Position numbers and translations under genes: made by a program. A stretch of DNA of 20,039 bases from contig NW_021824075.1 of NCBI RefSeq assembly GCF_006345805.1, forward strand, positions 1 through 20,039. Direction: 5' to 3'. The stretch comes from Octopus sinensis. Taxonomy: Eukaryota. Under the pieces are notes generated by a model, which saw only the letters and a program-made list of their open reading frames with translations, was not told where the DNA came from and did no database searches. Below are positions 610-19,441 of the stretch, in pieces; position 1 is the first letter of the stretch, and each line of letters starts with the position of its first letter.

Positions 610-636
<27 letters not shown>

Positions 637-838: not shown

Positions 839-880
<42 letters not shown>

Positions 881-925: not shown

Positions 926-931
926 GGTGTT

Positions 932-1052: not shown

Positions 1053-1107
<55 letters not shown>
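932..1107 (+). mobile_element. Partial tRNA-type SINE followed by (TG)n
   Basis: A-box-like TGGCTCAGTG, degenerate B box (gatcgatttcc), core gtgtccttgagcaagatactttatttcac. A related core lies at 3535-3595 (gttcgactcc...cttgagcaaaacacttcattgcac). (TG)n runs 1042-1107. Confidence 0.65.
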
Positions 1108-1112
<5 letters not shown>

Positions 1113-1205
1113 GGAGTGAAAGAATCCTCATGTTCCAACTCAATAAAATGTGGGTTTTATGTACTTATTCAGTCATTTATTTATTTTATTTTTTCTTCAT
1201 TTTAG

Positions 1206-1314
1206 CCTTCTTCCTTCTCCAAGACGGCAAACGAGATATTATCCATACCAGCTTACAGATCTCGCTTTGGATCCACTCTTGCTGTCGCCGATTTTGATAT
1301 GGATAAACATAACG
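1206..1314 (+). CDS. Integrin alpha subunit, first exon in window (start of penultimate FG-GAP blade)
   Basis: Pyrimidine-rich acceptor ttttcttcattttAG (ends 1205) and donor GTaaga (1315). Translates PSSFSKTANEILSIPAYRSRFGSTLAVADFDMDKHN(D), an FG-GAP motif (FG..LAVAD) with a Ca-loop-like DxDxD. Ends in phase 1 and joins exon 6572 in frame. Confidence 0.88.
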
Positions 1315-1819
1315 GTAAGAGAAAAGTCATAATGTAGTTTCTATTTCAGTAGTTAAAAGCACCAGATTTTCGAGAGGCCGAAGTCGTGATAGTGATTTAC
1401 GTTCACAAATAAAGATTTTTTAGATTTTAGTTTTGAAATTTGAAACGATATTGCAAGATTGCAGAATATTTTGGTCTGGAATTTATTTTCCTACAGTACT
1501 CAGCTCTAGTATAAATTCATTGAGCTGAAGACCAGCATTTGTAAAAAGAGAGAAAATACATCTGCATAACTTTTTATGTTGCAGGTGACTCGGAACATTA
1601 GCTTTTAACGGGGATCAAGTAACGGTATTTTATTCAATAGAAGTCAACTTACATCATATAAATATAAGGTTAGGTTTTAAGTTACTGGTTAACGGTGCTT
1701 CAAGGAAGCTCAATAAAGTTGATACTCCTGAAAACAGGACTAATTAACCACTGATGAAAGCAACTGATGGTAAAGCTGTTTGTCACCTTCTTTTACGATG
1801 ATGTATGAATATTTATTAA

Positions 1820-2020
1820 TGATTGATTGATTGAGTGAGTGGGTGAGTGACAGCTGTATTAGTGAAGTACATTCAGCTAGCCTGGTAATACTGTTTGATG
1901 AAAACGTGTGAATAGTGATTAAAGATTGACTCCTTGGTGTTAAAGATTGATTCGTTGGTATTAACCGTATTAGTGAAGTGCATTTTGTTGACGATTTGGC
2001 AATACAGCATGGTAACACAT
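1820..2020. repeat. Degenerate short tandem repeats
   Basis: (TGAT)/(TGAG) run; gtattagtgaagt at ~1856 and ~1967; adjacent 21-mers ttaaagattgactccttggtg and ttaaagattgattcgttggta. Confidence 0.6.
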
Positions 2021-2254
2021 AGCGTAACATAATTCTTAAAGAGGATCACAATGGCAAAGGTGGATCTTAGAATTACAAGTACAGTCCATCCGACGGGCTT
2101 CCATACAATTTCTATCTAATTTGATTCTCGCGACTCAGGTCAATCTGAAGTTTATGGTAAATGTATTTCACCGAGATTGAACTCGAAGCTTCACGTTGCG
2201 AAGTGACTTTTCTTCAACCGATAACCCACTTTGGAGTCTTTTTAAAGACACATT

Positions 2255-2660
2255 TTATCTTTTATATTTTTCTTGTTTCAGTCATTAGCCTGCGGTCATC
2301 CTGGAGCACCGCCTTGAATTTTTAGTCGAATGATTCGACCCCTGTTCTTCTTTTTTAAGCTTGGTACTTATTCAATCGGGTTCTTTTGCCGAAGCGCTAA
2401 GTTACGGGGATGCAAAACACAACCAACACCAGCTGTCAAGTGGTGGCGGTGAGGGGTACAAACAGACAGAAAGATACATACACGTAGATATATGTATCTA
2501 CGTGCATATATTTATATAAACGACGGCTTTCTTTCAGTTTCCGTCTGCCAAATCTACTCACAGGGCTTTGGTCAACTCGCGGCTATAGTAGAAGACATTT
2601 GCCCAAGGTACCACACAATAGTACTGAACCTGGAACTATGTGGTTGGAAACAACCATATA
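2255..2660 (-). mobile_element. Composite SINE (tRNA-like head, internal microsatellite, 3' tail)
   Basis: Reverse complement reads ...gttccaggttcagt...accttgggcaaatgtcttctactatagcc...gaccaaagcc...acggaaactgaaagaaagccgtcg-(TA/AC repeat)-...ccgtaacttagc...aagtacc...gtcga...aaggcggtgctccag...tgactgaaacaag. The same organisation occurs on + at 4915-5425. An older related fragment may lie at ~2050-2230. Confidence 0.75.
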
Positions 2661-3171
2661 CATATTAATAGCCTGAACTTATTAACACGCACACACACAC
2701 AATAACTACCCAGGTAAGAAATATAGTATCATGTAACAGGATTCGGAAAAAGGACGAAGTTTATTTCTTACGCTACTCCATTATAAAAAGTGTTTGACAT
2801 ATATACGGCTATCAGAGATAACTGGTTAGTAGGTTAGTATTTTTTATGATTTAACACATTAATGATGCTGTTAAATTGATTTACCCAAATGTTAGAATTG
2901 GGAGAAAATATTATTAGTTTATAAGCTGACCAACGTCTGCCTAATCTGTTCTTTTTCTAGTATTTTAGCAAACTTACACATTCAAAATTTTTTCTAAGTT
3001 CTTTTTTCTGCATCTAATTTGTTGTCAGTTTTCGATGCCTGTGGGTTTTTGTAAGATTTTCTGAGTCAATAGATTGATGGATTTTGCTGCAGTTGTCTCA
3101 TACTATTTCTCTTTTCCGCCTCTGTTTCTCTCGTGAAACTCGAATAAAGCAAGTAGTTTTTTTGTTGAAAG

Positions 3172-3172
<1 letters not shown>

Positions 3173-3218
<46 letters not shown>
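3173..3218. repeat. (TG)n(CG)n alternating purine-pyrimidine tract
   Basis: Visible directly. Confidence 0.9.
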
Positions 3219-3219
<1 letters not shown>

Positions 3220-3289
3220 TTCTCTTCTTTTCTCATTTGACTCTCAGTCTGTCTATTGCTCACGCATTTGCACATTAATACAATCAATA

Positions 3290-3480
3290 TACGAGAGAGT
3301 GTGGAAAAGTCCCTGCCTTTGGCTAAAAGAAAATACAAGAGGATCAGTTAATTATGATTTTATTCAACATATTCCTCTCTCAGATTCACACACTTATTGC
3401 AGCGGTCCTTCAGTTTTACAAAACTCTGCAACAGAACGCAGAAGGTTGGGCCTCCAATCAGGCCTTTCGTGACACTCTCA
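3290..3480 (-). mobile_element. Mariner (Tc1/mariner) 3' end: terminal inverted repeat plus transposase C-terminus
   Basis: TA at 3288-3289, then TACGAGAGAGTGTGGAAAAGT, a mariner-type TIR (tacgagg...aaaagt). The minus frame ends FVKLKDRCNKCVNLREEYVE-stop (3360), matching the mariner C-terminal 'KL..RW.KC....GDYVE' motif. The other end is not seen. Confidence 0.75.
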
Positions 3481-3509
3481 AAGCCAGAAACTCTAGTGGC
3501 TAGAGTGTG

Positions 3510-3745
3510 GCGCACAATATTGCTAGATTGTGTGTTCGACTCCTGGAGCAGATGACGCGTTACATTCTTGAGCAAAACACTTCATTGCACGTTGTGTTTT
3601 GCGAGTGGGAGAGTGGCAGAATCGTTGACGCGTCGGCAGAGGTACTTTATAATATAATATATCTTCGGCTCGCTACATTCTAAGTTCAAATTCCACCTAC
3701 CTAGAGAGGGCAACGGAAAACCACTCCAGTATTCATTCCAAGTCT
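3510..3745 (+). mobile_element. Adjacent degenerate SINE fragments
   Basis: B-box gttcgactcc; a second head with tggcagaatcgtt and aagttcaaattcc; then gggcaacggaaaaccactccagtatt, which resembles the RTE-derived SINE tail motif ggcaaaccactccagtat (recalled from memory). Confidence 0.5.
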
Positions 3746-4487
3746 AGCCATGAATGGCCAAAGTTCAAATAATCTACTTAACGGCAGCAGGAAAGGGTAC
3801 GGGCTCTTCCATATCTTATAGAGTGTGCTGGAGAAGATCTACATGCACTGGAACTGTCCAATGGCAGTCCACCACTAGGCTAGATCTATAGATGTATTAT
3901 GTCGTGTTTCTCGCAGGAAAGGAGTAAATTCATGGCCCTCTCCAGACTGCATAATCTGCACTGAGTAGAGCATTTAAAAAACGGAAGGTTGCATAGACGA
4001 AAAACGAAATAGATATTCATGAAAAGAACGGGCCTTTTATAGGCTTATGATTTTAATACAGAATTCGGTCGTATTTCCCAAACAAGTTGATCAATTATAA
4101 CTGTTGGATCTTATCCTAATCTCTGTTAGAATCAGTTATATTTGCACAGGCTACCACCGTCTCATTTTTGTATACATGAAAAGTGTAAGCTGGCACGCGT
4201 GTGTATAAACGTGTGTGTGCGGATGTGCTTGCCTTTGTGTGTAACAGAAGCCAATAATAGCAGTCGTCGAAAAAGTTATTTTCATTGATTTTCTGGTCAC
4301 ACATATTAGAATTTTGCAACTGTCTTTTAGAGAAGAGTTCAAGTAAACTTCTTGAACTGCTTTATCATTTTACATTTGAAATGCTTCGCACAATAAAGAA
4401 ATTTATTTGTATAATTTCCACCGACTTATTCGTTTGTATTTGTTTTGTTGCCGTTTAGTTTTAATCGTGTATCTGTGTAAGGTATAT

Positions 4488-4557
4488 AGATAGGTAGACA
4501 GGCAGACAGACAGATAGACATACATACAGACAGACAGGCAGGCAGGCAGACAGGCAG

Positions 4558-4591
<34 letters not shown>

Positions 4592-4700
4592 AGATGGAGA
4601 GAGAGAAAGTGTGTGTGAGCGACAGAGAGTGCGTGCATGTGATAGTGTGAAAACGTGTGTGTGTGCATATGCGTATGTGTGTGTGTGTGTGTGTGACTGT
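4488..4700. repeat. Compound (AGAC)/(AGGC)/(TG)n microsatellite
   Basis: Visible directly. Confidence 0.9.
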
Positions 4701-4914
4701 TTGTGCAGTTAATTTTGTTGCTGAGCAAAGGAATACGCTGAACGTCTTCATTCCACATTATGCAAGCTACTATTATCAAGTGACTAAAAGCGAGGTATCC
4801 AATTCTCTTTGCTTTAGGTTGTATTCCAACAACATAAGGTTTCTATTGAGTTTGGTGTAGTGATACGAAACCGTATAAGTCATGTTGAATAAATACTTTT
4901 GAATAATTTACTGA

Positions 4915-5425
4915 AGACGGTTGATCTGTTTCGACCCCACTGAATGGCATCTTGGGCAGGTGTTTTCTTCTATAGCCTCATGACCGACCACTACTTTTTA
5001 AACAAATTTGGTAAACCAAAGCCGCATGGAAGTTCATGTTATGTATGTATGTATGTATGTATGTATGTATGTATGTATGTATTTATGTATGTATTTATGT
5101 ATGTATGTATGTATGTATGTATGTATTTATGTATGTATGTATGCATGCATGCATGCATGCATGTATGTATGTATGTACGTACGGACGTACATATGTATGT
5201 GTGAGTGTATGTATGTGCATGTGCCTGTACCTATGTCTGTTTTTACGATGATGCCAATTGACGGTGACTTTAGCCCCGTAAGCTAGTGGTGCGGCAAAGA
5301 GAAAACGCCTCCATAAGTACCAGACGTATAGCTAAGTACCAGGGTCGACGAGATTTACTATAACCCTTTGAAGGTCGTGTCCCAGCATGGTCATAGTCTA
5401 ATGACGGAAGCAAATAGAAAAAATA
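4915..5425 (+). mobile_element. Composite SINE of the same family as 2255-2660, with an internal (ATGT)n expansion
   Basis: cttgggcaggtgttttcttctatagcc...gacc; (ATGT)n at 5040-5220; then ccgtaagctag...ataagtaccag...gggtcga...gaaggtcgtgtcccagcatgg...aatgacggaagc. Confidence 0.7.
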
Positions 5426-6197
5426 TATATCTAGGTCGATGAAGAGTTTACAATACTGTTTCAATAACTGACCGTATACGTGCTGTGTACAGCAGATTAG
5501 TAGCAAAACGGCATATGGAGAGCTTATCCGTTTCACCAGTCTACTGGACTTGTGTCCATTACACTTTTGTTACGTCACGACTTTGAGAAAGTCATGAACG
5601 TGACAAATTCCATTTCAAAGTTAATAAAAAAAAATGTTTTAAGCCTTCAATAGACTTAATAGATTCTACTGAGTGTGAATATTGAAGAATCTAGTACTTG
5701 GTACTATCTCATAAGCATGTAACTTAAATAATATACATAATAGGATATTTCTGTTTAATAGTTAACACATCGAGATCGACGAAAATATTACCAATAATAT
5801 ACAGTGGGTGAAGTGATCGATTATTCTCTTCCTTTAATAAAGAAGAGTCTGTTATTAAACACAGAAATTCATTACAACTTCACATATTCAATTTTAAAAT
5901 TTGGGATCAAAATGAAATTATGCAGTAACCCTGTCGTTTGCAACTACGAACGACACTTTACTTTGGTAATTATTTCAACTCTGAGGAAGGAAAGAAGGAA
6001 TAGAAGAACAAATGAAGAACAGTTGAAAGGGACAGAAATGGAAAGGAATTGTTTATATTTCGACGTTTCAAAAGTTCCTACGAAGAACAACATTCATTTC
6101 ACTGGTTTATTGAAGTCGGGCAGTTTTTCAAACTGGATTTTCTCGACGAGATTTTTTTTTACTGTTAATACCTAATACTACTCAACAATAGATCTAA

Positions 6198-6380
6198 GTT
6201 GTTGATGTTTAACCTCAAGTAAGCCCTGATCAGAGACATTCGAATAGTGGCTATACTATCTTTTTCATACATGCAGGGGGTCCTGGATACATTATCCAAC
6301 ATATCCTTTTCGAAGGTGGTCCTTTGAATGAAATTTGATGAATTTCTCGCTGACTGAACGACCTATAAAGGCTTCTTCAC
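6198..6380 (-). mobile_element. Old fragment of the interspersed repeat also at 9787-10010
   Basis: Starts gttgttgatgtttaacctcaagtaagccctgatc...gacattc, parallel to gttgttgctaagccgcaggtcaa...gatcaaagacattcc at 9790. Confidence 0.45.
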
Positions 6381-6571
6381 AGATTTGTAGTATCTAAATT
6401 ATTAAAAATGGTGTTGTTTTGTGGTTGTTGTTTTTTGGGAGTTCTTTTCGTGTTAATAAACATTCAGTACATATACTGCCTTATAATGAACAAGTAAATA
6501 AATGGACATAGTTTTCTCAAAGACACACTGGTAACGTATCGTAAAACAATGTCGCAACGTTTATTTTCCAG

Positions 6572-6757
6572 ATGTCCTAGTTGGGGCTCCTTACGAAAAT
6601 GATGGCATCGGTTGTATCTATTTATTTAACAGTGACGGAAAATTACTTAAGAAAACACCCTCACAAAGAATTGAAGGTACTAAAATAAATAACAACATCA
6701 GATCTTTTGGAATATCTTTTTCCCGCACCGTTGATATTGATAAAAATGGATACCCAG
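6572..6757 (+). CDS. Integrin alpha subunit exon (FG-GAP blades 6-7)
   Basis: Acceptor tttattttccAG and donor GTaaga; 186 nt, phase 1-1. Translates (D)VLVGAPYENDGIGCIYLFNSDGKLLKKTPSQRIEGTKINNNIRSFGISFSRTVDIDKNGYP(D): GAP motif, the SQRIEG linker typical of integrin alpha chains, and a canonical DIDKNGYPD Ca loop. Confidence 0.96.
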
Positions 6758-7588
6758 GTAAGAAATGTATTATTATTGTGTAGGTTACATAGGTTAGAAA
6801 TACGGCAAAGTTTTTTACTGCTTATGTCACTCTAGTTTTTTGTGTCACTACTAACTTACCCAAACATTACTAAAATATCTTGCCAACTTCTCGAAATACT
6901 CTTAAGATCAAATTGATGTCGACGCTGTTACCACAATGTAGGTTGAATTTGATCAGTCTCACTGATCTTAGTATATAACTCTTTAGAACATGGTCATAGA
7001 TAACACGTTATTTACTACAGCTAACTGATATAATCAGCGAGAAAGGTGCAAATTTAGAAATGTAACATTGCACCGTTTATTATGCATTCTCCTTTAAGTT
7101 GGAATTGTGTTTGAGACATTCACAGCACAAATTTGTTTCAACTAGTTTCCTTGTCATTATAAGAAAATGCGTGGACTTGATATGGATGAACACGGCAGAA
7201 AATTTACTAACTTCAAGATGAAAACCTAATTACTATTTGCTTAAACACAAATTAAATGAATGGATAGAAAGTCTGAAATCCAATGAGCTTTTATTTATTG
7301 AATGTCTTTAAAATAAGAAAGCTTGGTGGGAGGACAGAACGGCAATAACAAGGTATGACACAAGGAAGTTCTTGCAAATAGAAAAAAAATAGTAAGAAAG
7401 TATCTCGTAGTTTTCACTATGATACATCAGATAAAAGAAAATAATATCAACTATGTTTTACTCATATCATCGAAGAATAGGCTGAAGTATTAAAACTTGC
7501 AATCCACTTCTAAATCGCATGTAGAATGTAATAAGACAGTTAATGGGCTCTAATTTTCATAGACGTGCAAGTATGTTAGGTTTCAGAG

Positions 7589-7693
7589 ATTTGGCCCCTC
7601 AGATCACCCGAACTAGTTATTGCTGTTGGAGCTTACCTTTCGGATCAAGCTGTCGTACTTCAAAGCCGGCCAGTCATCAAACTATTTCTATAG
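7589..7693 (+). pseudogene. Truncated tandem duplicate of integrin exon 3 with its acceptor
   Basis: 7617-7682 matches 8333-8398 at 63/66 nt, and the ~28 nt upstream of the AG match with 4 mismatches. Reads (V)IAVGAYLSDQAVVLQSRPVIKLFL-stop (TAG 7691-7693). Confidence 0.9.
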
Positions 7694-8008
7694 GATCTCG
7701 TTAGAACCAAGAACTGGGAGAGAAACCAGGCCACACTGAAACATTAAGAGCTGTATATTTACTTAAAATTTTTCAGTCAGGCACTGCAGAAGCCAAAACT
7801 TGCACATGTATTCACCAGTTCTTTCAGGCGTGAAACAGTTCCAGTTCTCTGGGAGTGTGTCATTTGTCATTCGCAAAAAGCAGACAAGCCTAAAAGAAAA
7901 AAACATAAATATTGCAATTACCGTTCATGACTACGTACACTTAAACCTTTAAAGAAATTCCTAAAGGGCGGCGGTTGAATAACCACGAAGATAGCCATAA
8001 TCTTCATA

Positions 8009-8112
8009 CGAATTTTGTCGTGACCGACTTTACTCTTTTCATCCTACAATAGCTTAATAAAACAACTCAAACTTTTGAGTGTTTTGAAGCGATTGTACTC
8101 CACTTCTGCAAT
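8009..8112 (+). repeat. Intronic block duplicated at 8786-8887
   Basis: Manual alignment gives about 22 mismatches plus a 2-nt gap over ~103 nt, mostly transitions. The 777 nt offset is close to the 716 nt offset of the exon-3 copies. Confidence 0.85.
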
Positions 8113-8290
8113 CATCATCAATAGCGATCTACAACCGTATTAAGTATTTTTATTTAATAGTGTGTTTACAATAAGCAAGCATGATATTCGATGTTTCTTT
8201 AAATCATAAGTACTAATTCTAACTCAACTTCATATTTTTTCCAGTAATTTTTATCATGTTCAATAATGTTTACAAGAAAAACTTATTTAA

Positions 8291-8332
8291 ACTAACTTTT
8301 CTGTATTTTGCCACTCAAATCACCTGAACTAG
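8291..8332 (+). promoter_or_regulatory. Branch point (aCTAAC) and AG-free zone of the exon-3 acceptor
   Basis: CTAAC at 8292-8296 is followed by a T-rich run, with no AG until the acceptor at 8331-8332. Confidence 0.55.
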
Positions 8333-8527
8333 ATATTGCTGTTGGAGCTTACCTTTCGGATCGAGCTGTCATACTTCAAAGCCGGCCAGTCATCAAACCA
8401 CATAAGAGTCTGGTAGTTACACCAAAAATACTGCAATCCTTTTTGGATCCGATTTGGCAGACAAATGGGGACATAATAGTAAATGTTACCCTTTACATGT
8501 TCTTTTCCGGTGGAAATTATGATTTAG
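8333..8527 (+). CDS. Integrin alpha subunit exon (end of propeller, start of thigh domain)
   Basis: Acceptor gaactAG and donor GTgagc; 195 nt, phase 1-1. Translates (D)IAVGAYLSDRAVILQSRPVIKPHKSLVVTPKILQSFLDPIWQTNGDIIVNVTLYMFFSGGNYDL; SRPV marks the propeller/thigh boundary in integrin alphas. Lies inside track ORF 8308..8646. Confidence 0.95.
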
Positions 8528-8912
8528 GTGAGCTTGTTGAGATTGCTTTTCTTTTTATTTTATTCTTTGTCATCAATGTAAACGCTAAAAAACAAAAAAA
8601 GACTTCTTTTTATATGGGAAAAAATTCAAACCTAGTTTACAATTAGTTTCATTAAAATCTTTTTTTTTTTAGCATTTTATGTTTAAACGTGTTATTATTT
8701 TCAATGTCTGTTGGGGATTCTGAGTTGGCAGAAATCGTAGATGAAGTGCTTTCACCGTATTTAGTTTCTTTTTTAATTTTTCGTTCGAATTCTGCTGTAA
8801 CTGATTTTGCTTCTTTCACCCTACAAGCTTAATAAAATAACTAAAATTTTCGAGTCTTTTGAAGTAACTATATTCTGCTTCTGCAATTTGTGTTAATATA
8901 CGAAGTGAAATG

Positions 8913-9057
8913 AAGGCGGCGAGATGGCAAAGTCGTTTGCAGCATTTCACGTTCTGAGTTCAAATTCTACCGAGGTGGACTTTACCTTTCATACTTTTGG
9001 GGTTAATAAGATAAGTACCAGTTGAGCACTGGGGTTGATGCAATCGACTTAGCCCGT
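8913..9057 (+). mobile_element. tRNA-derived SINE (family also at 11075-11310 and 15896-16036)
   Basis: ggcggcgagatggcaaagtcg (A box), gagttcaaattc (B box), core cctttcatacttttggggttaataagataagtaccagttgagcactggggttgatgcaatcgact. Confidence 0.8.
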
Positions 9058-9336
9058 TTATTCCACTTGTGGTTACTTGGAACAGAATAATAGTGGTACG
9101 TCAACGAAAGAGGTGTTCTCTTTCCGTCCTGCATCTAAATATGTTTTTGTTTACTTGATGTGTGTAATGATCTTAATTCACGAACAATAAATTGAATACG
9201 GGAGAATGACTTAGAAATAAATGAACTTTAAAAGAATAGCAACCTAATGATAAATTTGCTAATTCTATATACAATATTGCCTAAGAAGGAAAGAAAAACT
9301 ATCAACAAAAATATAATGAAATATTTTTCTCTTTAG

Positions 9337-9479
9337 TTATGAATACAAATTTAAAAGTGGATATTGGAGAACCTGCGAGAAGAAAACGAGTCTATTTGGA
9401 GAATAACCAGAAAGAATACACCAGTTCAGAAAAAATCAAGACGAGTTTTTACGGAAAAGTTTACCAAATCTACGTAAAG
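9337..9479 (+). CDS. Integrin alpha subunit exon (thigh domain)
   Basis: Acceptor tttttctctttAG and donor GTacgt; 143 nt, phase 1-0, open. Translates (V)MNTNLKVDIGEPARRKRVYLENNQKEYTSSEKIKTSFYGKVYQIYVK and links the phase of the flanking exons. The L.VD....RR.F/Y pattern fits the thigh domain. Confidence 0.86.
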
Positions 9480-9786
9480 GTACGTCAAAAATAGTATTGT
9501 TTTATAATGAAGATTTGTTGTGCTTTAAGAACATTGTGTTATTGTATTAAATTCGCGTTGAGAATGTTGAGACAATTGACTTGCAATATATGTCGATTTG
9601 AATCCCTTAACTCAACATAGAAGTGTGGTTTTTAAGAACCAGAATAAAATGTATCGGAACTTTTAATGGATAACTGACTTCCCACAAAATACTTTATTTT
9701 CGGAGAGCCAGTTAGTATGTTATGAAGCAATCCCTCTTCGACTGTAAAGGTACTCGAGTTTATAACAAATAGTTAAAATATAATGA

Positions 9787-10010
9787 TTGTTGTTGCTAAG
9801 CCGCAGGTCAATTCACATTTAGCAGGTCTGTGATCAAAGACATTCCAGCTTTGACCGACCCGTCAGTTTTTCATACATTGTGCATTCAATACCTCTAATT
9901 ATCCAATTTAGTCTTAGATATCACCTTCTTAAGACGATAGGGTGTGATTTAACGGACATTTGGCTGCTATTTCTAGCAGATCGAACCATCACGTAGATAC
10001 TCCTTCATTG
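9787..10010 (-). mobile_element. SINE-like interspersed repeat
   Basis: Minus strand contains ctgctagaaatagcagccaaatgtccgttaaatcacaccctatcgtcttaag and ends in a caacaacaa tail. A related fragment lies at 6198-6380. Confidence 0.55.
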
Positions 10011-10249
10011 AACCGTGCAAAATATAATAGCTTCTATACCCAGTAAAAGCTATTTCATTGCATCGTTAATGTAAAAAAAAATCTATCTCAAAAGCTAAAA
10101 AGAAATCTTTTAGTTTATCTAGATATGATTCCATATTTTTATAAATAGAAAATGTGTTATGATTCCGAACATTTAGAAAATATAATATATTATAGTTCTG
10201 AACGCATAGTTTGTCATATAAATCTGGCTGCTGCTTATTCGTAACTTTT

Positions 10250-11038
10250 CTAATCTTGCATTTTTGTCAGTGGATTCTGAAGACTACAATTTCTTGCATG
10301 GATGATAAGTCAGGGATTATTCTATTGTAACCGTCTTGAGATACCACATCTTTTCGATTTTAATAAGCAAATCTTTATATTTTCTGAGTTAGTCAAATTC
10401 TTTTTCCGAGATATTATGATCACAAGGAATGTTCATGTCGATCAATAAACATACTTTATTATTTTGATCTTTCGTGACAATATCCGGTTTATTAGTTTTG
10501 ATGGTTCTGTCAGTATGTTGTGGAAATTCATAAAGAATCGTTACATTTTCTCCCTCAGTTACAGCCTCAGATGGTGCTTATACCATTTGTCAGCACTTTT
10601 GATTTTATAATGCCGACATATTAACCAGTGTAAATATTGGCCCTACTCCATCATGCCTTGATTGATAATCTATAGGTGCTAGAACTTTACATCCAGAGAT
10701 TAGGTGGTTCACCGTTTCAATTTCATCGTTGTAGTATCGGCATTTCGGGTCTACTCTATTTTTCATTACATTCGCTTGGTAATTTCGGGTCAATATGTTC
10801 TGATCTTGAGCAGCTAAGATGAAACCATCGCTCTCTGCTTTTAGCCCTGAGCTTTGTAGCCACTGATGGGTGTGCTTCTGGTCTACATCAGCTTGTTTGC
10901 TACGGGTGATATATTTGCCATGTAGGGGTTTTTGTTCCCACCTATCAGCCAATTGTTCATACGCTTGTTTTCTTTGCCTTGGATTTTAACTTCCTTGCAA
11001 CAACAGCTGACGCACTTCTATCTTGCTGTTCAACCTGG
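10250..11038 (-). mobile_element. Element A: old 5'-truncated R4/Dong-type RLE non-LTR retrotransposon (C-terminal part)
   Basis: W..KPLHGKY, GLKAESDGFILAAQDQ, decayed CCHC (CRYY...ETVNHLISGC), RHD at 10650-10658, and KYKDLLIKIEKMWYLK near 10330-10390. The 5' junction abuts ttattatt at 11039-11046. Confidence 0.85.
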
Positions 11039-11074
11039 TTATTATTCATGAACTCAGGTGTGCGAGCTAGTAAA

Positions 11075-11310
11075 AGCGGTGAACTGGCAGAATCGTTTGG
11101 ACGCAGAACAAAATGCTAAGCAACGTTTCGTCCTTCTTTATGTCCTGAGTTCAAATTCTGCAGAGGTCGAATTTGCCTTTCATCCTTTCGGGGTCGATAA
11201 CTTAAGTACCAGTTGAGTACTGGGTGAATATAATCTACTGTCCACCTCCCGCAAATTTTAGGCCCTGTGCCTAACAGATTGGATAATTATTATTGTTGTT
11301 GTTGTTGTTG
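11075..11310 (+). mobile_element. tRNA-derived SINE with (TTA)/(TTG) tail
   Basis: A box TGGCAGAATCG (11085-11095), B box GAGTTCAAATTC (11147-11158), core gcctttcatcctttcggggtcgataacttaagtaccag, tail attattattgttgttgttg. Confidence 0.85.
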
Positions 11311-11730
11311 AGTGAAAGAGCAGTGCATGCCATCAAAGTGACACTGGGGTAAAATATACGAAACCCAGCATACCCATCATTAATACCCGTCTGATAAGGG
11401 TACACTAGGCACATGCATCACAACCATATGTGCACGAAATGGTGATCTCATATCAATATTCAAACCCCAAAGAATTCCTCTCTCAACACATGGCTATGAT
11501 GCTCTCCCGCTACTTCTGCTTGTGATCAGAGATGCACATATTATCAGCCACAAAGGGACATGGTCAACTGGTTATGGTCAAACAACTGACAACCAAATCT
11601 GTGGTATTGAGCAGAATATTTGCTGTAGCCCATCTTTTATACCAAGACAAAACAATGTACATGATAACACTTCCAATCAGTTAAGATCAGCAGCCATGGG
11701 AGCCACTGCCTGGTACTGCATCAGGGCATT
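11311..11730. mobile_element. Element X copy 1: non-coding repeat with an internal ~138 bp deletion
   Basis: Colinear and highly similar to 16331-16875 but lacks the segment equivalent to 16478-16615. Flanked by (TTG)n on the left and (TTA)n on the right. Confidence 0.88.
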
Positions 11731-11762
11731 TATTATTATTATTATTACTATTATTATTATTA

Positions 11763-11820
<58 letters not shown>

Positions 11821-11885
11821 TATTTTATTTTTATAGCGTTATTATTATTATATATTATTATTATTATATTATTATTATTATTATT
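11731..11885. repeat. (TTA)n microsatellite
   Basis: Visible directly; lies between X copy 1 and element B. Confidence 0.97.
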
Positions 11886-14800
11886 CTATGTTTGACTTTT
11901 GCTTTATATTTGTACAAGTTGGCTCCAAGTCTCACCCAGAGACCTCAAGAGACAACAGGTTGGAAGTTCATGTTGTTGTTATGCCTAGTGTGCCATATAT
12001 TTGGGGGGTGGGATGTTGTACTAATGAATGTCTAAAAAAAAAGTTTTTTTTTTTTTTTTTTTTTTTAAACCGAAAATTATGTTTGTTTTAAACCTTGAGA
12101 TTACATAGAGAGTATTTTGCGTAGGATATGAGCAGTTCCCATGAGCACTATCTTTTGAACTTCTGCCATTTTTGGGTTTCCTGGTATCTGAGTTAGGTAG
12201 CTATCAGCCCCTTTTGCTATCATTCCCAGGGCACCTATGACAACAGGTATTGTTTTAGTCTTCAGCTTCCACATTTTGCTGATTTCTATTTCAAGATCTT
12301 TATATTTGCTCAGTTTTTGGTAGGTCTTGACAGATACGTTTATATCGATTGGGACAGTCATATCAATGAGGAGGCATGTTCTTTGTTTGAAGTCTTTCAA
12401 TATGATGTCTGGCCTATTTGCATCTATCTTCCTGTCAGTTTGAATGGTGAAGTTCCAGAGGAGTGAGATGTGGTCATTTTCAAGCACTGGGGGTGGTTTG
12501 TGTTCCCACCAGTTTTTTTCATGGGGCAAATCCAGGTTTTTACAGATTACCCAGTGAATATATTGTGCAGCTCTATCGTGCCTGTTGAGATACTCTGTAG
12601 GCGCTAGAAGACTGCACTTGGAGACCACATGGTCAATGGTTTCATTTTGTTGCTTGCATACACGACACGTTGGACTGCTTCTGATCTTTAATATGTTGGC
12701 CTGGTAGTTTCTTGTTGGTAGGCATTGATCTTGAGCTGCTATGATAAACCCCTCTGTTTCAGATTTAAGCCAGAGCCATTAGCCATTGATGGGTCAGGGC
12801 TTTGTCGATATCTGCATTATTCGCTCTCTTTGGGTATTTGCCATAGAGAGGTTTTTCTTGCCATTTATTATTCAGAATATCTAAGGCCGCAGTTTTGGCA
12901 CGGTTTTCATGCGCCTAGCTTTTTCTGTGCTTGTTTCTTGTATATCTATCTCTAATTCCGAAATTGGTTGTATTCGGAATTCACTTAGATATTCCTTTGC
13001 CTGTTTTGTGACTGAGTATGATGCTTTCTTGTTTTCATGTTTTGAGACAAGTTTTAACATCCAGTCCTCAGAGTTTTTCAGGTAGGTGTCTAGGCCAATT
13101 GTAGCAATCTTCATTGTTATTGCCAGTTGCAAAAGACCACGGCCTCCCTCTTTTCTTGGCAGATAGAGTCGTTCTGTATCTGCCTTAGGGTGGTGCATTC
13201 TATGCATTGTCAACAGTTTCCTTATTTTTCTGTCGAGCTGACATATTTCAGTAATTGACCAGTTAACAATATTGAAACTGTAAGTCACGACTGGTATAGC
13301 TAATGCATTGATTGCTTCGATCCTGTTTCTTCTTGCATTCAGCTCTGTCTTGAGTATTGCTCTCACTCTTCGATAGCATTCTCTCCTGATCCTTTCCTTC
13401 ATCTCTGAATGCCTTATTCCGTTCCCTTCAATTACCCCTAGGTACTTGTAGCTCTCCGCTGGGTCTAGTTCTTTTATGACATTCTGTGTGGGTCGGTTAA
13501 CGTTAGATGTTTCTGTCATTTTTCCTTTGATAAAGGTAGCCTTTGCACATTTATCGAGGCCGAATTGCATTCTGATGTCGTCACTGAATTGTTTGACTAT
13601 CGCTAGTAAGCCCTTGAGTTGTTGATCATTTTTTGCAAAAAGCTTTAAATCATCCATGTAAACGAGATGATTTATATTTTTATCAAACATTTTATACCCG
13701 TACTGCGCGTCATTGAGCAGCTTTGAGAGAGGTATTAAGGATAAACAAAAGAGGAGTGGTGACAGTGAGTCACCCTGGAAAATGCCACACGAAATTTTTA
13801 CATCACCAGCATTTAGGGATTCACTGTCACTGTTCAGGTTAGTGTGGTTCTCCATGATCTCATACTTACAGTCAAGAAGTTTCGCAGAGTTGGTGCTATC
13901 TTATACATTTCAAGGCATTTCCTAATCCAGCTATGTGGTAGGCTATCAAAAGCCTTTTTATAGTCTATCCAGGCTATTGATAAGTTTTTGTGTCGTTTGT
14001 GACAATCTTCTAAGATCATCTTATTGATGAGTAGTTGGTCTTTACAGCCGTAGGATCCACGTTTACATCCTTTCTGTTCATTAGGGAATATGCTGCTGTC
14101 TGTTAAAAAACTATAGGTATATTCCGTCAGGACAGATGTTAGTGTTTTGTACATAGTTGTTAAGCAGGTTATGGGTCTATAGTTTTTTTGGTTCATTTGT
14201 TTCTTCACTTTTTGGAAGCAGGAATGTTAACCCATTAACTAGCCAAGGAGGCATCCTACTAGGGTGTTGCAAAGCATCATTGTACAGTTCTGTTAGCAGT
14301 TCATGGCTCTCTGGGAAGGCATTCAGCCAGAAGTTAGGATTTTATCCTTTCCTGGAGACTTCCATTTGCTTGACCTCCTGAGAGCAGATCTTATATCTTC
14401 TACCTTGACACCCTCCCACTTTTGCTCTTCTAAGGGGTCCAGTTCTGTAGATATTCTGTCAATCCAGGGGGCCTTTTCGTTGTGTGTTTTTTCTTCTGCC
14501 CAGATTTTATTCCAAAATCTCTGCACTTCTTCTTTTGATGGTACAGACCCTGCAGTAAACGCTGTTTTTCCTATCTTCCTGTAAAAATTCTTGGTGTTAT
14601 TTTTGAACATGTTGTTGTCCTTGAAAAATCTAACACGCTTTTCATACCTCGCTATGCGGGCAGCTTTGGCAGATACCTTTTGTTTGATGGTTTCTATGGT
14701 GGCATCAATATCAAGTATAGTTTTCATATTGTATTTTTTCAGTAATTTTTGGGTTTTTGTAGGTTTGGTAGTCTTGTGAGCCTTAAGGTTTTTCAAATAT

Positions 14801-15749
14801 TCAATGTCAGATCTAAATATTTTAATTTGTTGTTGCAGACGTTCTTGCCAAGAAGGCTTTTTGTGGGACTGTTGCCGTTTCTAATCTTTACACCACACAT
14901 AGGATCGTTGAGATTTTCGCGGATGCATAGTATAGGTGGTTGAGGTTTGTGATATCAACATCATTAACTGAAATTATATCCTTAAGTGCAAGCCGGATTT
15001 TACCAATTATTTTCATGTTTTGGTTAGAGTTGCGGATTTTAGGAAGTGTATCATCACGCTCATCCATGCTGGTTTCTTAATTTTCAGCCATTCAATCATG
15101 ATTTGATTTTTTAGCTCATGTAGTTCTGTTGGGTCAATATTTGTGTGACTTTCTTTATCTATTTGATGCTCATCTGTCTTAGTGTTTATGATTGGTTCAG
15201 GGCGTATTTCACTTTGCCTATCACTTATACTAACTCTTTCAATCCTCTCTTCGTTTTTATCCGCCCTGGGCTGGTCTATAATCATTTCCTCTGTATTATC
15301 TTCTCTAGCTGCAGCTTCGTTCATTTTCCGATATTGCTTGCCTAACCTGATCAATCTCTACTTCAGTCAGTAATTTCTTTTTTATAATGTTTCTTCTAAT
15401 ATTGGCAAGCTTGTTACTGTCTATGTAGGGTCTTACTTCAGGGTGTTTCTGTCTGTCTCCAGTTTAAGTATGCTTGTACAGTGCTAGACTTATCTGTGGG
15501 GAAATATATGGCATGGTAGAAGGCCTCAAGAACTTCTTTATTACCTTCCCTAGACCATTTTTCCTTCTTTTTCTTTTGATTATTTGGTGATGAGCATGGA
15601 TGGCCATCTGTTGGAATATTCCGGTTGTGGGGGGTCCGTCCAGCTCCTGTGTGTTGGGAAGATTTGGATCCAGTAACTGATTTTTTCAATCAGGATTTGG
15701 TTCAATTTTCGGGTACGTGGTCTTTGTAATCCGCGCAATGACCAATGCG

Positions 15750-15750
<1 letters not shown>
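11886..15750 (-). mobile_element. Element B: near full-length (~3.9 kb) R4/Dong-type non-LTR retrotransposon, frameshifted
   Basis: One ORF broken into track ORFs 15438-15689, 15013-15354, 14323-14796, 13834-14208, 12881-13855 and 12101-12628. N-terminal KWSRE.NKEVLEAFY motif; RT motifs NYRPITCL, KKAFDS, GIFQGDSLSPLLF and YMDD (13649-13660); CCHC knuckle CRVC-x7-H-x4-C; RLE motifs RHD (12575-12583), NRPDI, IDMTVP and KLSKYKDL. ~215 nt 3' UTR; (TTA)n on both sides. Confidence 0.95.
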
Positions 15751-15789
<39 letters not shown>

Positions 15790-15895
15790 TATTATTATTA
15801 TTATTATTAATTATTATTTATTATTATTTTATTATATTATTATTATTATTATTATTATCATCTTATCATCATCATCATTATTATTATTATTATTA
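15751..15895. repeat. (TTA)n/(TCA)n microsatellite
   Basis: Visible directly. Confidence 0.97.
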
Positions 15896-16034
15896 TCGTC
15901 GCTACGTTCTGAGTTCAAATTCCGCCGAGTTCGACTTGCCTTTTATCCTTTAGGGGTCGGTAAGTTAAGTAACAGTGAAACACAAGAGTCGATGTAATCG
16001 ACGAGTCCCTTCTCCCTAAATTTCAGGCCTTATG

Positions 16035-16091
<57 letters not shown>

Positions 16092-16110
16092 CATCATCAA
16101 TATCATTATC
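15896..16110 (+). mobile_element. 5'-truncated tRNA-SINE with long (TTA)n/(TCA)n tail
   Basis: B box gagttcaaattcc, core gccttttatcctttaggggtcggtaagttaagta, end aaatttcaggccttatgc, tail from 16036. Confidence 0.82.
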
Positions 16111-16330
16111 ATTTTCATTATCATCTTTCAATTCTGTTTCAATTTCTTGCCAAATGTCTTCCAGGAACCTAGAAAAAAGCACTGTATACATTGGTAGGCC
16201 ATTAAAATAAACACGCCAGATTGTTCATTTACCAATCATGCGATAGAGGAAAAAGGGAATAAAGACAGAGAGAAAAAGGGAAAATAAAACATAAAAAAGT
16301 TAACAAAGAAACATTAATATTATTATTATT

Positions 16331-16872
16331 GGGTGAGAGAGCAGTGCATGCCATCAAAGTGACACTGGGGTAAAATATACGAAGCTCAGTATACCCATCA
16401 TGACTACCCGTCTGATAAGGCTGCACTGGGCACATGCATCACAACCATATGTGCGCGAAATGGTGATCTCATATCAAGATAAACAGTGCATGACCTTGCA
16501 GGTGGGGCCCATTTAGAATTTTCTTCCAACCGAGTAGCCCATCCTGCTAAAAAGGTCCCCGAATAAGGGTTGTTTAAGGATGTTGAACGAAACACCCATG
16601 TTTCCAAAGGTAAATTATCCAAACCTCAAAGAATTCCTCTCAACACATGACTATGATGCTCCCCCACTACATCTGCTCGTGATCAGAGATGTACATATCG
16701 TCAACCACTAAGGGACATGTTCAACTGGTTAAGGTCAAACAACTGACAAGCAAATCTGTGGTATTTGCTGTAGCCCATCATTTATACCGAGACAAAAAAA
16801 TGTACATGATAACACTTCCAATCAGTTAAGATCAGAAGTCATGAGAGCCACTGCCTGATACTGCATCAGGGC

Positions 16873-16875
<3 letters not shown>
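16331..16875. mobile_element. Element X copy 2: ~545 bp non-coding repeat between (TTA)n tracts
   Basis: Same termini as copy 1 (gagagcagtgcatgccatcaaagtgacactgggg ... actgcatcagggcatt). No convincing ORF, TIRs or pol III boxes seen. Confidence 0.88.

Positions 16876-16933
<58 letters not shown>
16876..16933. repeat. (TTA)n microsatellite
   Basis: Visible directly; lies between X copy 2 and the 3' end of element C. Confidence 0.97.
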
Positions 16934-19361
16934 GCCTTCGCACAGCTTCTAACGTTGTAGGTGTACCACAGTGTCAGCTGTTCACTACCACTGAACTAAG
17001 GTAACACCTTATTTTTCGAGCACTTTCCGGAGTATTCGAGTGGTTCTAAGCAGTGCTGTTTTCTGCAAGCGCTCCACACTTATTGCAGCCCCTATTTGTT
17101 CCGCGTACTTCTCGAGATTTTTGCTCACTGTTCCCAGTGCTCCGACAATTATTGGTACTACTGCTACCGTTTTCATCGACCACCACTACTCAACTTCCCA
17201 AGCTAACCTGTCATGTCTTTCAACTTTTCTTTCTTCCTTATCGCATACCTTGTTGTCTGCTGGGCATGCTATATCTATGATCCAGCATAGTTTTTTCTTT
17301 CTCAATAAATACTATGTCCGGCTTCCTATTCTATATCTCATGGTCACACTGAATCATAAAATCTCATAGGATCTTTGCATTTCTATTCTCGACGATGTCT
17401 TCGGGTTTGTATTCGTACCAATATTTTACTCTGGCAAGTCCATACTTGTTGCAGAGTGTCCAATGGACAAGCCTGGTTATATTGTCGTGGCGTCTCTTAT
17501 ATTCCTTCTGTGCTAGTGGCGTACATTGGTTGGTAATATGCCATACGGTTTCACCGTTTTGTCCACAGATTCTGCACTTATCACTTTCTGATGTGTAGTC
17601 TATTCTGTATTTTATGTAATTTGTTCTTAGTGCTTAGGACAGCACAGATTATAGCCTCCGTTTCCGGTTTTAAATCACTTTTAGTCATCCACAGCTATCT
17701 TTTTTCTCTGTCTATCTTATCTTCAATATCCCTATGAAATTGACCTCCATTCTTTTCTTTACCGATCTATTTTCAGTTTCATTCATTTTTAAATTCTTGT
17801 ATAGTACTTTATTTTTGCAATCTTTCATCCTACTCAGGCCTGATCTTCCTACTTCTAATAATAGCAGTTCTGTGGCATTTTTTAAATACCATGCTATGTT
17901 GTTTTCTTCTGATCTAATACTGTGTTCGCATCCAGTAAGTCCTCTTCCCCCTCTTTTTCTTGGTACATACAGTCTGTCTGTGTCACTTTTTGGGTGGAGT
18001 GACCCATATCTAGTTAGCAACTTCCTTGTCTTTCTGTCTAAGCTGTTTAGTTAACTGTCTACTGTCCATGCGATTACCCCTGCTCCATATCTAAGGAATA
18101 AAACCGCCCAGGTATTGATAGCTTCGATCTTATTCCGTCCATTTATTTTCGACTATAGGATCAATCTCAGTCTGCGCAAGTACTCCACGTTAAATTTTCC
18201 TGTCATTTATTTCTCCATCAATTTATCCATTTCCCAAATCCCCAAGTACTTATAGCCCGTCTCTTCTATCTGCTTCACAACCTCCCCCGACGGTATCGAT
18301 AGCCCATTCATACATTTGATTTTGCCTCTCTTGAAGACTAACACACCACACTTTCTCAGCCCGAACTCCATTCTGATATCAGCACTGAAGTTATACATCG
18401 TATCAGCGAGGGAACTGACTTGGGTTTCATTTTTACCATAAAGTTTGAGGTTATCCATGAATAACAAATGGTTGACGTTTTGCTGGCGGCTTTTGAATAC
18501 AGACCTAGCTTTTGCTTTCCTCAATATCAGTGTTAGTGGTATCATGCACAGTACAAAGATCAGTGGGGACAGGCAGTCTCCTTGGAGATGGCCCTCCTGA
18601 TTTCTACTGTCCCCAAACTTCTTCCGTATCTGTCAGGTCCGTCCTCCAATTCGCCATACTTTTTCCAAACAATCGCTCAATATTCGATGCAATATCAAGT
18701 AGGTTCATGCACTCCATAATCCAAGAATGTGGGATCATATCGTACCCCTTACGATAGTCGATCCATGACATGGCTAAGTTACTTTCCCTCCTTTTGCAGT
18801 CTCTAAATACAGTTTTGTCTATCAGGAGTTGGTCCTTGGAACCTCTGCACCTACGCTTGTAACCCTTCTGCTCATGTGGCAGGACTCCATTTTATTTCAG
18901 ATGTTCGTACATTGACTCTGCAAGTATTCCAGCCAATAATTTCCACATAAGTGGCAAACAGGATATCGGCCTGTAATTGTCTACCGTATTGCCTTTTGCT
19001 ATGATTTTCAGGCACATCGCTGTCCTACCCAATGTCAACCACTCTGGTGTTCCTTGGATGGCATTTAATAAGGTGTTGATTTGCGCAGCTATTCGTGCAT
19101 GACATTCACCAAATCTTTTGATCCAGTTGCCTTTAACTCCATCTGGTCCCGGGGCCTTCCAGTTGCTCATTTTTTCTTGATTTACTTCACTTCCTTAACT
19201 TAAGTAACTAGTTCTGCCTGTTTTGGAGAGACTACTGTTTGTTTCAGTTCTTGCAACCATTCAGCATCCTTCTTGTGCTCCTTGTCTTTGCACCAGATGT
19301 CACTCCTAAACCTTTGACTTTCAATGTTATCAGGTATCAACTTTTCATCTGTACACTCTCC

Positions 19362-19365
<4 letters not shown>
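16934..19365 (-). mobile_element. Element C: 5'-truncated (~2.4 kb) R4/Dong-type retrotransposon of a different subfamily, decayed
   Basis: [24 protein letters not shown], catalytic motif mutated to FMDN (18450-18461), GYKYLG, DTDRLYVPRKRGGRGL, CRIC-x7-H-x4-C, RHD (17484-17492), KPDIV, IDIACP. ORF ends RILRKVLEK-stop with a ~90 nt 3' UTR unlike that of B. (TTA)n on both sides. Confidence 0.93.

Positions 19366-19399
<34 letters not shown>
19366..19399. repeat. (TTA)n microsatellite just upstream of the exon-5 acceptor
   Basis: Visible directly. Confidence 0.95.
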
Positions 19400-19441
19400 T
19401 TAATTTTTGTTATTACTTTTTTCTTAATCTTATTTTCCCAG

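What the first reader, a model, noticed from the sequence alone, without database searches (positions are those of the whole stretch)
10250..19399. Chain of three different R4/Dong-type retrotransposons docked in (TAA)n tracts, all in one orientation
Seen: elements A, B and C are RT-CCHC-RLE elements with clearly different protein sequences, and B and C have different 3' UTRs. All are on the - strand, and every intact junction abuts a (TTA)n tract, read as (TAA)n on the element strand. Known: Dong elements of the R4 clade are described as targeting TAA microsatellites. Inference: several lineages repeatedly reused this target, each insertion leaving TAA tracts on both sides as new sites. This would create a self-renewing hotspot; these repeats account for roughly 8 kb of a ~10 kb intron. 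The shared orientation would then come from target-strand specificity, not only from selection against sense insertions.
Basis: partly seen in the sequence, partly recalled or inferred. Interest (0 to 1): 0.75.

Follow-up and report, generated by a model that had tools for sequence, protein, structure and literature searches.

The report
Dong-type LINE chain in TAA repeats
Three dead copies of different Dong-type (R4 clade) jumping genes sit head-to-tail in one (TAA)n microsatellite region, which is the ordinary, already described behaviour of this family.

Summary
Window 10323-19415 holds three minus-strand RT-CCHC-RLE LINE copies: A 10323-11056, B 11886-15750 and C 16934-19367. They share 30-45% amino-acid identity. 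All four intact junctions, both ends of B and of C, touch a (TTA)n tract, which reads (TAA)n on the element strand. A distance tree with published reference sequences puts B and C with Bombyx and Aedes Dong, with Ascaris R4 as sister (both groupings 100% bootstrap), apart from R2, NeSL, HERO and CRE.

In 81 related loci, (TAA)n lies on the sense strand 3' of the element in 26 cases against 4 with (TTA)n, and 5' in 19 against 1. All 11 loci with both flanks visible are concordant. Same-orientation chains of mixed Dong lineages separated by (TAA)n also occur in other genomes.

- Two SINE-like copies lie on the opposite strand and carry (ATT)n tails.
- Two copies of a 420-550 bp repeat (R') have unresolved orientation.

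The intron claim could not be checked. This is a new member of a known kind, of low to moderate interest.

The parts
10323..11056 (-). LINE A. A Dong-type fragment holding only the CCHC and RLE parts, broken at both ends. It has no 3' UTR or tail. Its 5' side abuts the head of SINE1.
   Evidence: tblastn with P0013 and P0002 covers 10979/10952->10323. A is 45% identical to B and 30% to C, and its best matches (55-60%) are proteins from the B-query list. Pfam gives a weak zf-RVT match.
11057..11310 (+). SINE-like repeat, copy 1 (11057-11283), with an (ATT)3(GTT)6 tail (11284-11310). It faces the opposite way to the LINEs.
   Evidence: Three copies lie in the window at 8951-9033, 11057-11292 and 15903-15976, 83-84% alike. 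A B-box-like GAGTTCAAATTC motif lies on the + strand. Rfam and ARAGORN find no tRNA. My recollection that this is the abundant octopus SINE is unverified.
11311..11729 (.). Repeat R', copy 1, flush with (ATT)/(GTT) repeats on its left and (TTA)n on its right. Orientation unresolved.
   Evidence: 87-93% identical to 16322-16874, with a 135-base gap relative to copy 2. Neither covariance model matches it.
11730..11885 (-). (TAA)~52 tract on the element strand. It is the 3' tail of B and the flank of R'1.
   Evidence: TRF: period 3, 52.7 copies, 85% matches.
11886..15750 (-). LINE B. A near full-length Dong-type element with about 7 frameshifts or stops: N-terminal Myb-like motif, RT, CCHC, RLE and a 215-nt 3' UTR. 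The UTR holds an internal A23 run (12044-12066) and a conserved double-hairpin motif (11887-11951).
   Evidence: Frame maps. RVT_1 at E 4e-28. Alignment to R2 structures through the RLE. tblastn residues 81-1244 of P0002. Covariance model R2 hits at E 2.8e-6, with B not in the training set.
15751..15896 (-). (TAA)~49 tract lying between the 5' end of B and the 5'-truncated start of SINE2.
   Evidence: TRF; sequence.
15897..16121 (+). SINE-like repeat, copy 2. It is 5'-truncated (15897-16035) and carries an (ATT)~28 tail (16036-16121).
   Evidence: Alignment to copy 1; TRF.
16122..16310 (.). 189 unassigned A-rich bases, possibly original host sequence between two tracts.
   Evidence: No match within the window or in any fetched locus.
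16322..16874 (.). Repeat R', copy 2, preceded by (ATT)4 (16311-16321).
16875..16933 (-). Pure (TAA)~20 tract. It is the 3' tail of C and the flank of R'2.
   Evidence: TRF: 100% matches.
16934..19367 (-). LINE C. A 5'-truncated Dong-type element from a second deep lineage (RT, CCHC, RLE, 78-nt 3' UTR) with many frameshifts.
   Evidence: tblastn residues 430-1217 of P0122. 74% nucleotide identity over 2467 nt to L086, which also ends in (AAT)n. The C group has 100% bootstrap support.
19368..19415 (-). (TAA)~16 tract at the 5' junction of C.
   Evidence: TRF; junction sequence.

Best explanation
A (TAA)n.(TTA)n microsatellite region was hit repeatedly by site-specific Dong-type LINEs of the R4 clade. 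These elements encode RT, a CCHC motif and a restriction-like endonuclease in a single ORF.

Inferred from the published R2/Dong mechanism: the endonuclease nicks the (TTA)n strand. The (UAA)n 3' end of the element RNA pairs with that strand and primes reverse transcription. Every copy therefore ends up with (TAA)n on its own sense strand on both sides. The 5' tract is the remaining target and the 3' tract is the copied tail.

Because the repeat is strand-asymmetric, all Dong copies in one tract must point the same way. Each new tail is also a fresh target, which produces chains.

Shown here:
- clade membership of B and C;
- the junctions in this window;
- the polarity rule in 81 relatives;
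- the same kind of chain in other genomes.

Inferred, not shown: which strand is nicked, and the order of insertions.

Three families (A, B, C) landed here and all are now dead. The same tracts also took in two SINE-like copies with (ATT)n tails in the opposite orientation and two copies of R'.
For: - **Domains.** RVT_1 and zf-RVT matches, and an RT-to-RLE alignment with R2 structures. RPD...D...K motifs are readable in A, B and C.
- **Tree.** The Dong group and the R4 clade are both at 100% bootstrap. The B group is at 98% and the C group at 100%.
- **Junctions.** Four of four intact junctions lie at tracts.
- **Relatives.** L001 is flanked by (TAA)n on both sides. Flank counts are 26:4 downstream and 19:1 upstream, with 11 of 11 loci concordant. 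(TAA)n association runs across the whole Dong group in the tree.
- **Chains elsewhere.** L002 holds 3 elements and L084 holds 5-6. L083 holds 3 on the + strand and 2 on the - strand, each with matching tract polarity. L012 holds 2.
- **Literature.** Dong targets (TAA)n in insects, molluscs and cnidarians (PMC3812793, PMC7998251).
Against: - No copy from the source genome other than this window could be examined, and no empty orthologous site.
- The nicked strand and tail-primed annealing are taken from R2/Dong literature and were not tested.
- A has no intact junction.
- Three LINEs sharing one orientation would happen by chance 25% of the time in this window alone.
- The relatives come mostly from short metagenome contigs that break at repeats, so many flanks are unseen.
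Confidence: 0.85

Rival explanations
1. The elements are not target-specific. (TAA)n is only the 3' tail made at reverse transcription, and the 5' contacts arise because AT-rich tracts are general landing pads.
For: Other repeats (the SINE-like copies and R') also sit in these tracts. Some relatives end in poly(A), (AT)n or other repeats.
Against: Upstream tracts are sense-strand (TAA)n 19:1, and loci with both flanks are concordant 11 of 11. 5'-truncated copies start at the tract itself: C, L034, L078 and chain members. Non-(TAA)n tails are confined to particular subclades.
Confidence: 0.04
2. The chain was assembled by segmental duplication or unequal crossing-over between (TAA)n tracts, not by separate insertions at one site.
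For: A block of SINE-like repeat, R' and (TTA)n recurs at about 5.0-5.16 kb spacing.
Against: - The LINEs next to the two blocks are only 34-36% identical in protein, so they are not duplicates.
- The two SINE-like copies are about 84% alike and differ in truncation.
- The R' copies are 87-93% alike and differ by a 135-base indel.
- The spacers between the repeats also differ.
Confidence: 0.05
3. The shared minus-strand orientation reflects selection against sense-strand insertions in a host intron rather than target polarity.
For: Antisense bias of LINEs in introns is a general finding (my own knowledge). Three of three copies in one orientation is not significant on its own.
Against: Host gene and intron could not be identified here. 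In relatives, orientation always matches tract polarity, including opposite orientations side by side in L083. The SINE-like copies in the same interval face the other way.
Confidence: 0.04

Closest known systems
Dong (Bombyx mori), DongAg/DongAa (mosquitoes) and DongBg (Biomphalaria glabrata): the (TAA)n-specific LINEs of the R4 clade
   Same: Single ORF with RT, CCHC and RLE. (TAA)n lies on the sense strand at both ends. B and C group with Dong at 100% bootstrap. B is 39.5% and C 30.6% identical to Bombyx Dong over 550-565 aligned positions. An N-terminal Myb-like motif is visible by eye in B, as PMC7998251 reports for Dong.
   Different: B and C belong to two deep marine-invertebrate lineages that are separate from the insect Dong pair, a split with 72% bootstrap support. 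The 5' HDV-like ribozyme shown for Bombyx Dong (PMC3774820) was not detected at the 5' end of B.
R4 (Ascaris lumbricoides)
   Same: Same clade and the same domain order. R4 is sister to the Dong group at 100% bootstrap.
   Different: R4 targets 28S rDNA, not a microsatellite. It is 31% identical to B and 25% to C.
Dong-R4 families annotated in octopus genomes (PMC13282606, PMC8967140)
   Same: They belong to the same RepeatMasker class. If my unverified recollection of the SINE is right, the window comes from a cephalopod. In those genomes Dong-R4 is abundant: 5 recently active families and 1129 insertions in O. vulgaris.
   Different: No octopus consensus sequence was available for comparison. 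The best database relatives reach only 63% (B) and 59-70% (C) identity and are unnamed.
R2 (Bombyx, Drosophila, zebra finch)
   Same: RLE-type LINE integrated by target-primed reverse transcription at a fixed target in a fixed orientation. The solved R2 structures align with B from the RT through the RLE.
   Different: R2 targets 28S rDNA and has N-terminal zinc fingers. It is only 17-22% identical and forms a separate clade.

Membership tests
R4 clade / Dong group of RLE LINEs | RT phylogeny places the element with R4 and Dong and apart from R2, NeSL, HERO and CRE. | tested here: met
   Neighbour-joining tree on 567 columns with 300 bootstraps. B, C and 14 database relatives group with Bombyx and Aedes Dong at 100%. 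Adding Ascaris R4 also gives 100%. References come from PMC5678591, supplement 10. A has no RT, so it was placed only by its CCHC-RLE similarity to B-group proteins.
R4 clade / Dong group of RLE LINEs | Single ORF with RT followed by a CCHC motif and a PD-(D/E)xK restriction-like endonuclease, and no APE endonuclease. | tested here: met
   RVT_1 and zf-RVT matches. Alignment with R2 proteins through the RLE. C-x2-C...H-x4-C and RPD...D...K motifs can be read in A, B and C. The ORFs are broken by frameshifts.
Dong | Insertion into (TAA)n, with (TAA)n on the sense strand at both the 5' and the 3' junction. | tested here: met
   B and C meet this at four of four junctions. Relatives give 26:4 downstream, 19:1 upstream and 11 of 11 concordant. 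A is not testable because both its ends are broken.
Dong | HDV-like self-cleaving ribozyme at the 5' end (PMC3774820). | tested here: inconclusive
   Rfam finds nothing at 15560-15800 or at the 5' ends of 12 relatives, but the Rfam models for this ribozyme type are narrow. B may also lack its true 5' end. C-group relatives share a conserved 5' helix whose nature is unknown.
Dong | No N-terminal zinc fingers, and a diverged Myb/SANT-like N-terminal domain (PMC7998251). | tested here: inconclusive
   Pfam finds neither a zinc finger nor a Myb domain in the N-termini of P0002, P0122 or B. A KW(S/T)RE...EAFY...W motif is seen by eye in all three.
R2 | 28S rDNA target and N-terminal ZF/Myb domains. 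| tested here: not met
   The flanks are microsatellite, not rDNA. Identity to R2 is 17-22% and R2 forms a separate clade.

The most novel reading that the evidence does not exclude
One (TAA)n.(TTA)n tract may be exploited from both strands by two guilds of opposite polarity. On one strand sit (TAA)n-tailed Dong LINEs. On the other sit (ATT)n-tailed SINE-like elements, perhaps with R'. The second guild would be driven by an (ATT)n-specific Dong sublineage such as the one seen in L035, L037, L039 and L076. A single microsatellite would then seed a bidirectional, self-extending island of repeats.
Probability: 0.2. Interest if true: 0.5.

Novelty: new member of a known kind. Interest (0 to 1): 0.25.

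Why it matters
The window is a clean example of how a site-specific LINE family turns a microsatellite into a growing stack of repeats with forced orientation. Chains mixing Dong lineages turn out to be common in invertebrate genomes. This helps repeat annotation, because (TAA)n-separated same-strand RT fragments should be read as separate insertions rather than one element. It also bears on models of microsatellite growth. It does not change what is known about Dong.

Tried and rejected
- **Source contig.** An exact look-up of a 324-aa window ORF, meant to find the source contig and organism, found nothing on record.
- **SINE core in papers.** Searching papers for the SINE core sequence gave no hits, so the cephalopod origin rests on my recollection only.
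- **tRNA in the SINE head.** Rfam and ARAGORN found none.
- **HDV-like ribozyme.** None was found at the 5' end of B or in relatives.
- **N-terminal domains.** Pfam found neither a Myb domain nor a zinc finger.
- **R' orientation.** Covariance models R1 and R2, built from the Dong 3' UTR motif, do not hit R'. An ad hoc hairpin pattern does hit R'2 on the minus strand, but it has a null expectation of 0.62 hits per window, so I make no claim. A-richness on the + strand hints the other way.
- **R' and the unassigned 189 bases.** blastn against all fetched loci gave no match.
- **Host exons.** ORFs in 1-10300 showed nothing recognisable.
- **Literature.** Xiong & Eickbush 1993 is not held. No paper I found describes Dong chains explicitly.
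- **Tree building.** The first bootstrap run timed out and was redone with a faster distance routine.
Full report
**What is in the sequence**

Tandem Repeats Finder reports five period-3 (TTA)n tracts on the + strand: 11730-11885, 15751-15896, 16036-16121, 16875-16933 and 19368-19415. It reports none anywhere else in the 20 kb window.

Between the tracts, the minus strand carries long but broken reading frames. tblastn with intact database relatives gives objective limits for three elements:
- C runs 19367->17012 and matches residues 430-1217 of P0122. It is 5'-truncated, and its first coding base is adjacent to the tract at 19368.
- B runs 15653->12104 and matches residues 81-1244 of P0002. 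Its 5' end is at 15750 and its 215-nt 3' UTR reaches 11886.
- A covers only 10979/10952->10323 and matches residues 987-1196 of P0002. It holds the CCHC and RLE parts, and lacks its last ~49 residues, its 3' UTR and its tail.

Both ends of B and both ends of C touch a tract, so all four intact junctions do. The T23 run at 12044-12066 lies inside B's 3' UTR and is not a tail. Relatives L003 and L008 have similar internal A runs.

A direct repeat recurs at 11139-11729 and 15903-16874. It resolves into two different units.
- The left part is a SINE-like repeat with three copies on the + strand: 8951-9033, 11057-11283 and 15897-16035.
  - It carries a B-box-like GAGTTCAAATTC motif.
  - Copy 1 ends in (ATT)3(GTT)6.
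  - Copy 2 is 5'-truncated. It starts flush with the tract 15751-15896 and ends in (ATT)~28.
  - These copies therefore face the opposite way to the LINEs.
- The right part, R' (11311-11729 and 16322-16874), is 87-93% identical between copies, with a 135-base indel. Both copies are flush with (ATT)-type repeats on the left and (TTA)n on the right.
  - Its orientation is unresolved.
  - It is A-rich on the + strand.
  - By eye it has a Dong-like 3' hairpin on the minus strand, but neither covariance model detects that hairpin. A simple pattern for it is expected 0.62 times per window by chance.

Bases 16122-16310 are unassigned. The stretch 10323-19415 thus holds at least seven inserts, nearly all of it repeats plus tracts.

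I recognise the SINE core as the abundant octopus SINE. That is recollection only, because neither a look-up of a window ORF nor a text search of the sequence confirmed the host.

**What the LINEs are**

Pfam gives RVT_1 for B (E 4e-28) and C (E 7e-19), and a weak zf-RVT match for A and B. B aligns with solved R2 proteins from the RT through the endonuclease (9nl3, 9dou, 8gh6; E down to 1e-28). The C-x2-C...H-x4-C and RPD...D...K motifs are readable in all three elements.

Each of B and C has more than a thousand database relatives. Nearly all are unnamed, the best reach 63% and 59-70% identity, and the two hit lists differ.

For a clade test I took the RLE-LINE reference alignment from supplement 10 of PMC5678591. 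It covers R2, R8, R9, Ascaris R4, Bombyx and Aedes Dong, CRE, HERO, NeSL and Utopia. A neighbour-joining tree on 567 columns with 300 bootstraps gives the following support:

| Grouping | Bootstrap |
|---|---|
| B, C and 14 database relatives with the two Dong references | 100% |
| The above plus Ascaris R4 | 100% |
| B group | 98% |
| C group | 100% |

Identities over the RT-to-CCHC region:

| Pair | Identity |
|---|---|
| B - C | 36% |
| B - Bombyx Dong | 39.5% |
| C - Bombyx Dong | 30.6% |
| B - R4 | 31% |
| B - Bombyx R2 | 21% |

A is 45% identical to B and 30% to C, and its best matches (55-60%) are B-group proteins. Three distinct Dong-type families is therefore correct.

**Is (TAA)n a target or only a tail?**

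I fetched 80 related loci from metagenome contigs, plus L001. The flank counts are:

| Flank | Loci evaluable | Sense-strand (TAA)n | (TTA)n |
|---|---|---|---|
| Downstream (complete C-terminus and at least 100 nt beyond it; first tract) | 53 | 26 | 4 |
| Upstream (at least 100 nt before the protein match; nearest tract) | 48 | 19 | 1 |
| Both flanks visible | 11 | 10 TAA/TAA | 1 TTA/TTA |

All 11 loci with both flanks are concordant. Copies that are 5'-truncated start right at a (TAA)n tract (L034, L078, L062). L001, the closest relative of B, has (TAA)12 upstream and (TAA)n downstream. L086 and L087, the closest relatives of C, end in (AAT)n. On a tree labelled with flank types, (TAA)n runs through the whole Dong group.

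It could not be tested in the source genome itself.

**Chains elsewhere**

Longer genomic loci show the same architecture:
- L002: (TAA)57, a full element, (TAA)30, a C-like element truncated at residue 479, (TAA)29, then a B-like element, all on the + strand.
- L084: five or six elements of both lineages on one strand, separated by (TAA)n.
- L083: three elements on the + strand with (TAA)n and two on the minus strand with (TTA)n.
- L012: a C-like element, (TAA)4, then a B-like element.

Orientation follows tract polarity in both directions within one region. Selection inside a host gene cannot do that.

**Mechanism**

Published work states that Dong inserts in (TAA)n in insects, molluscs and cnidarians (PMC3812793, PMC7998251). 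It also states that R4/Dong elements have RT plus a restriction-like endonuclease.

From the R2 paradigm I infer that the endonuclease nicks the (TTA)n strand and that the (UAA)n RNA end pairs with it to prime reverse transcription. This fixes orientation and leaves (TAA)n on both sides, so each tail is a new target. The polarity rule and the chains are shown here. The nicked strand and the order of events are inferred.

**Side observations**

- *3' UTR motif.* Dong-group 3' UTRs share a two-hairpin motif.
  - A covariance model built from six loci finds it only on the sense strand, in the 3' UTRs of 15 or more loci.
  - A second model hits B's 3' UTR at E 2.8e-6, although B was not used to build it.
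  - 90.9% of cells pair, against at most 57.5% when partners are slid, and 13 of 14 pairs show compensatory changes. The alignment was fitted to the model, which favours the structure.
  - C's UTR differs in sequence and is not hit. By eye it keeps the first hairpin, with a compensatory change in L087.
- *Other target repeats.* One subclade has (ATT)n, (AT)n or poly(A) at its ends. A basal subclade has (ACTT)n or (ACAT)n.
- *Conserved 5' helix.* C-group 5' ends share a conserved helix of unknown nature.

**Verdict**

The phenomenon is established biology of Dong. This is a new set of members of a known kind, with a modest extra: the same tracts also hold opposite-strand (ATT)n-tailed repeats. 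The intron statement remains unchecked.

Noticed in passing
window 11887-11951 (-); loci L014, L018, L020, L022, L025, L054, L017, L044, L013, L001 and others, in their 3' UTRs: Dong-group LINEs share a two-hairpin 3' UTR motif. The first part has consensus ACCCUUAGGuCcuUGGUUagGaCCCGGg. About 12 nt later comes ACC-stem-loop-stem-GUGAA, which lies 10-50 nt before the (TAA)n tail. Covariation supports it: 13 of 14 pairs show compensatory changes. It is a likely recognition site for the element's own RT.
   Followed up: partly
L035 (both ends); L037, L039, L076 (3' end); neighbours L047, L044, L051, L034: One subclade of Dong-like LINEs carries (ATT)n on the sense strand, the reverse polarity of Dong. 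Its neighbours carry (AT)n or poly(A) tails. A basal subclade (L061, L068, L079) carries (ACTT)n or (ACAT)n. Target repeat and polarity have therefore changed within the clade.
   Followed up: partly
window 11057-11310 and 15897-16121 (+); third copy 8951-9033: SINE-like repeat with (ATT)n tails, docked in the same tracts but facing the opposite way to the LINEs. Its 3' part gives weak covariance-model hits on the + strand at homologous positions (11182-11233, E 2.8; 15945-15984, E 2.5). It includes ACCAGU..ACUGGGUGAAUAUAA, which resembles the second Dong UTR hairpin. These hits are not significant.
   Followed up: partly
window 11311-11729 and 16322-16874: Repeat R' (420-550 bp) is present twice. 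Each copy is flush with microsatellite on both sides and lies next to the 3' tail of a LINE. Its strand and kind are unknown. Copy 1 lacks 135 bases that copy 2 has.
   Followed up: partly
L014, L016, L018, L020, L022, L025: first ~70 nt after the upstream (TAA)n: C-group full-length elements share a conserved 5' start, UAGCGCCAGUGG.... A 7-bp helix (nt 3-9 with 48-54) encloses a variable hairpin that shows covariation. No Rfam ribozyme matches it, but it could be the counterpart of the Dong HDV-like ribozyme.
   Followed up: partly
L015 and L026: first ~80 nt after the upstream (TAA)n: The sequence right after the tract looks tRNA-like (GGUCUAGUGGU...GGUCCUGAGUUCGAUUCCC). ARAGORN calls no tRNA there. 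It may be a tRNA-derived leader, or a SINE docked upstream in the sense orientation.
   Followed up: partly
window 7589-8112 and 8305-8887: A roughly 720-bp tandem duplication, with segments 81-93% identical, lies upstream of the finding.
   Followed up: no
window 611-1107, 3174-3206, 4496-4695, 5040-5216: Dense (TG)n, (TA)n, (AGAC)n and (TATG)n microsatellites. The weak Rfam miRNA hits in these stretches are low-complexity artefacts.
   Followed up: no
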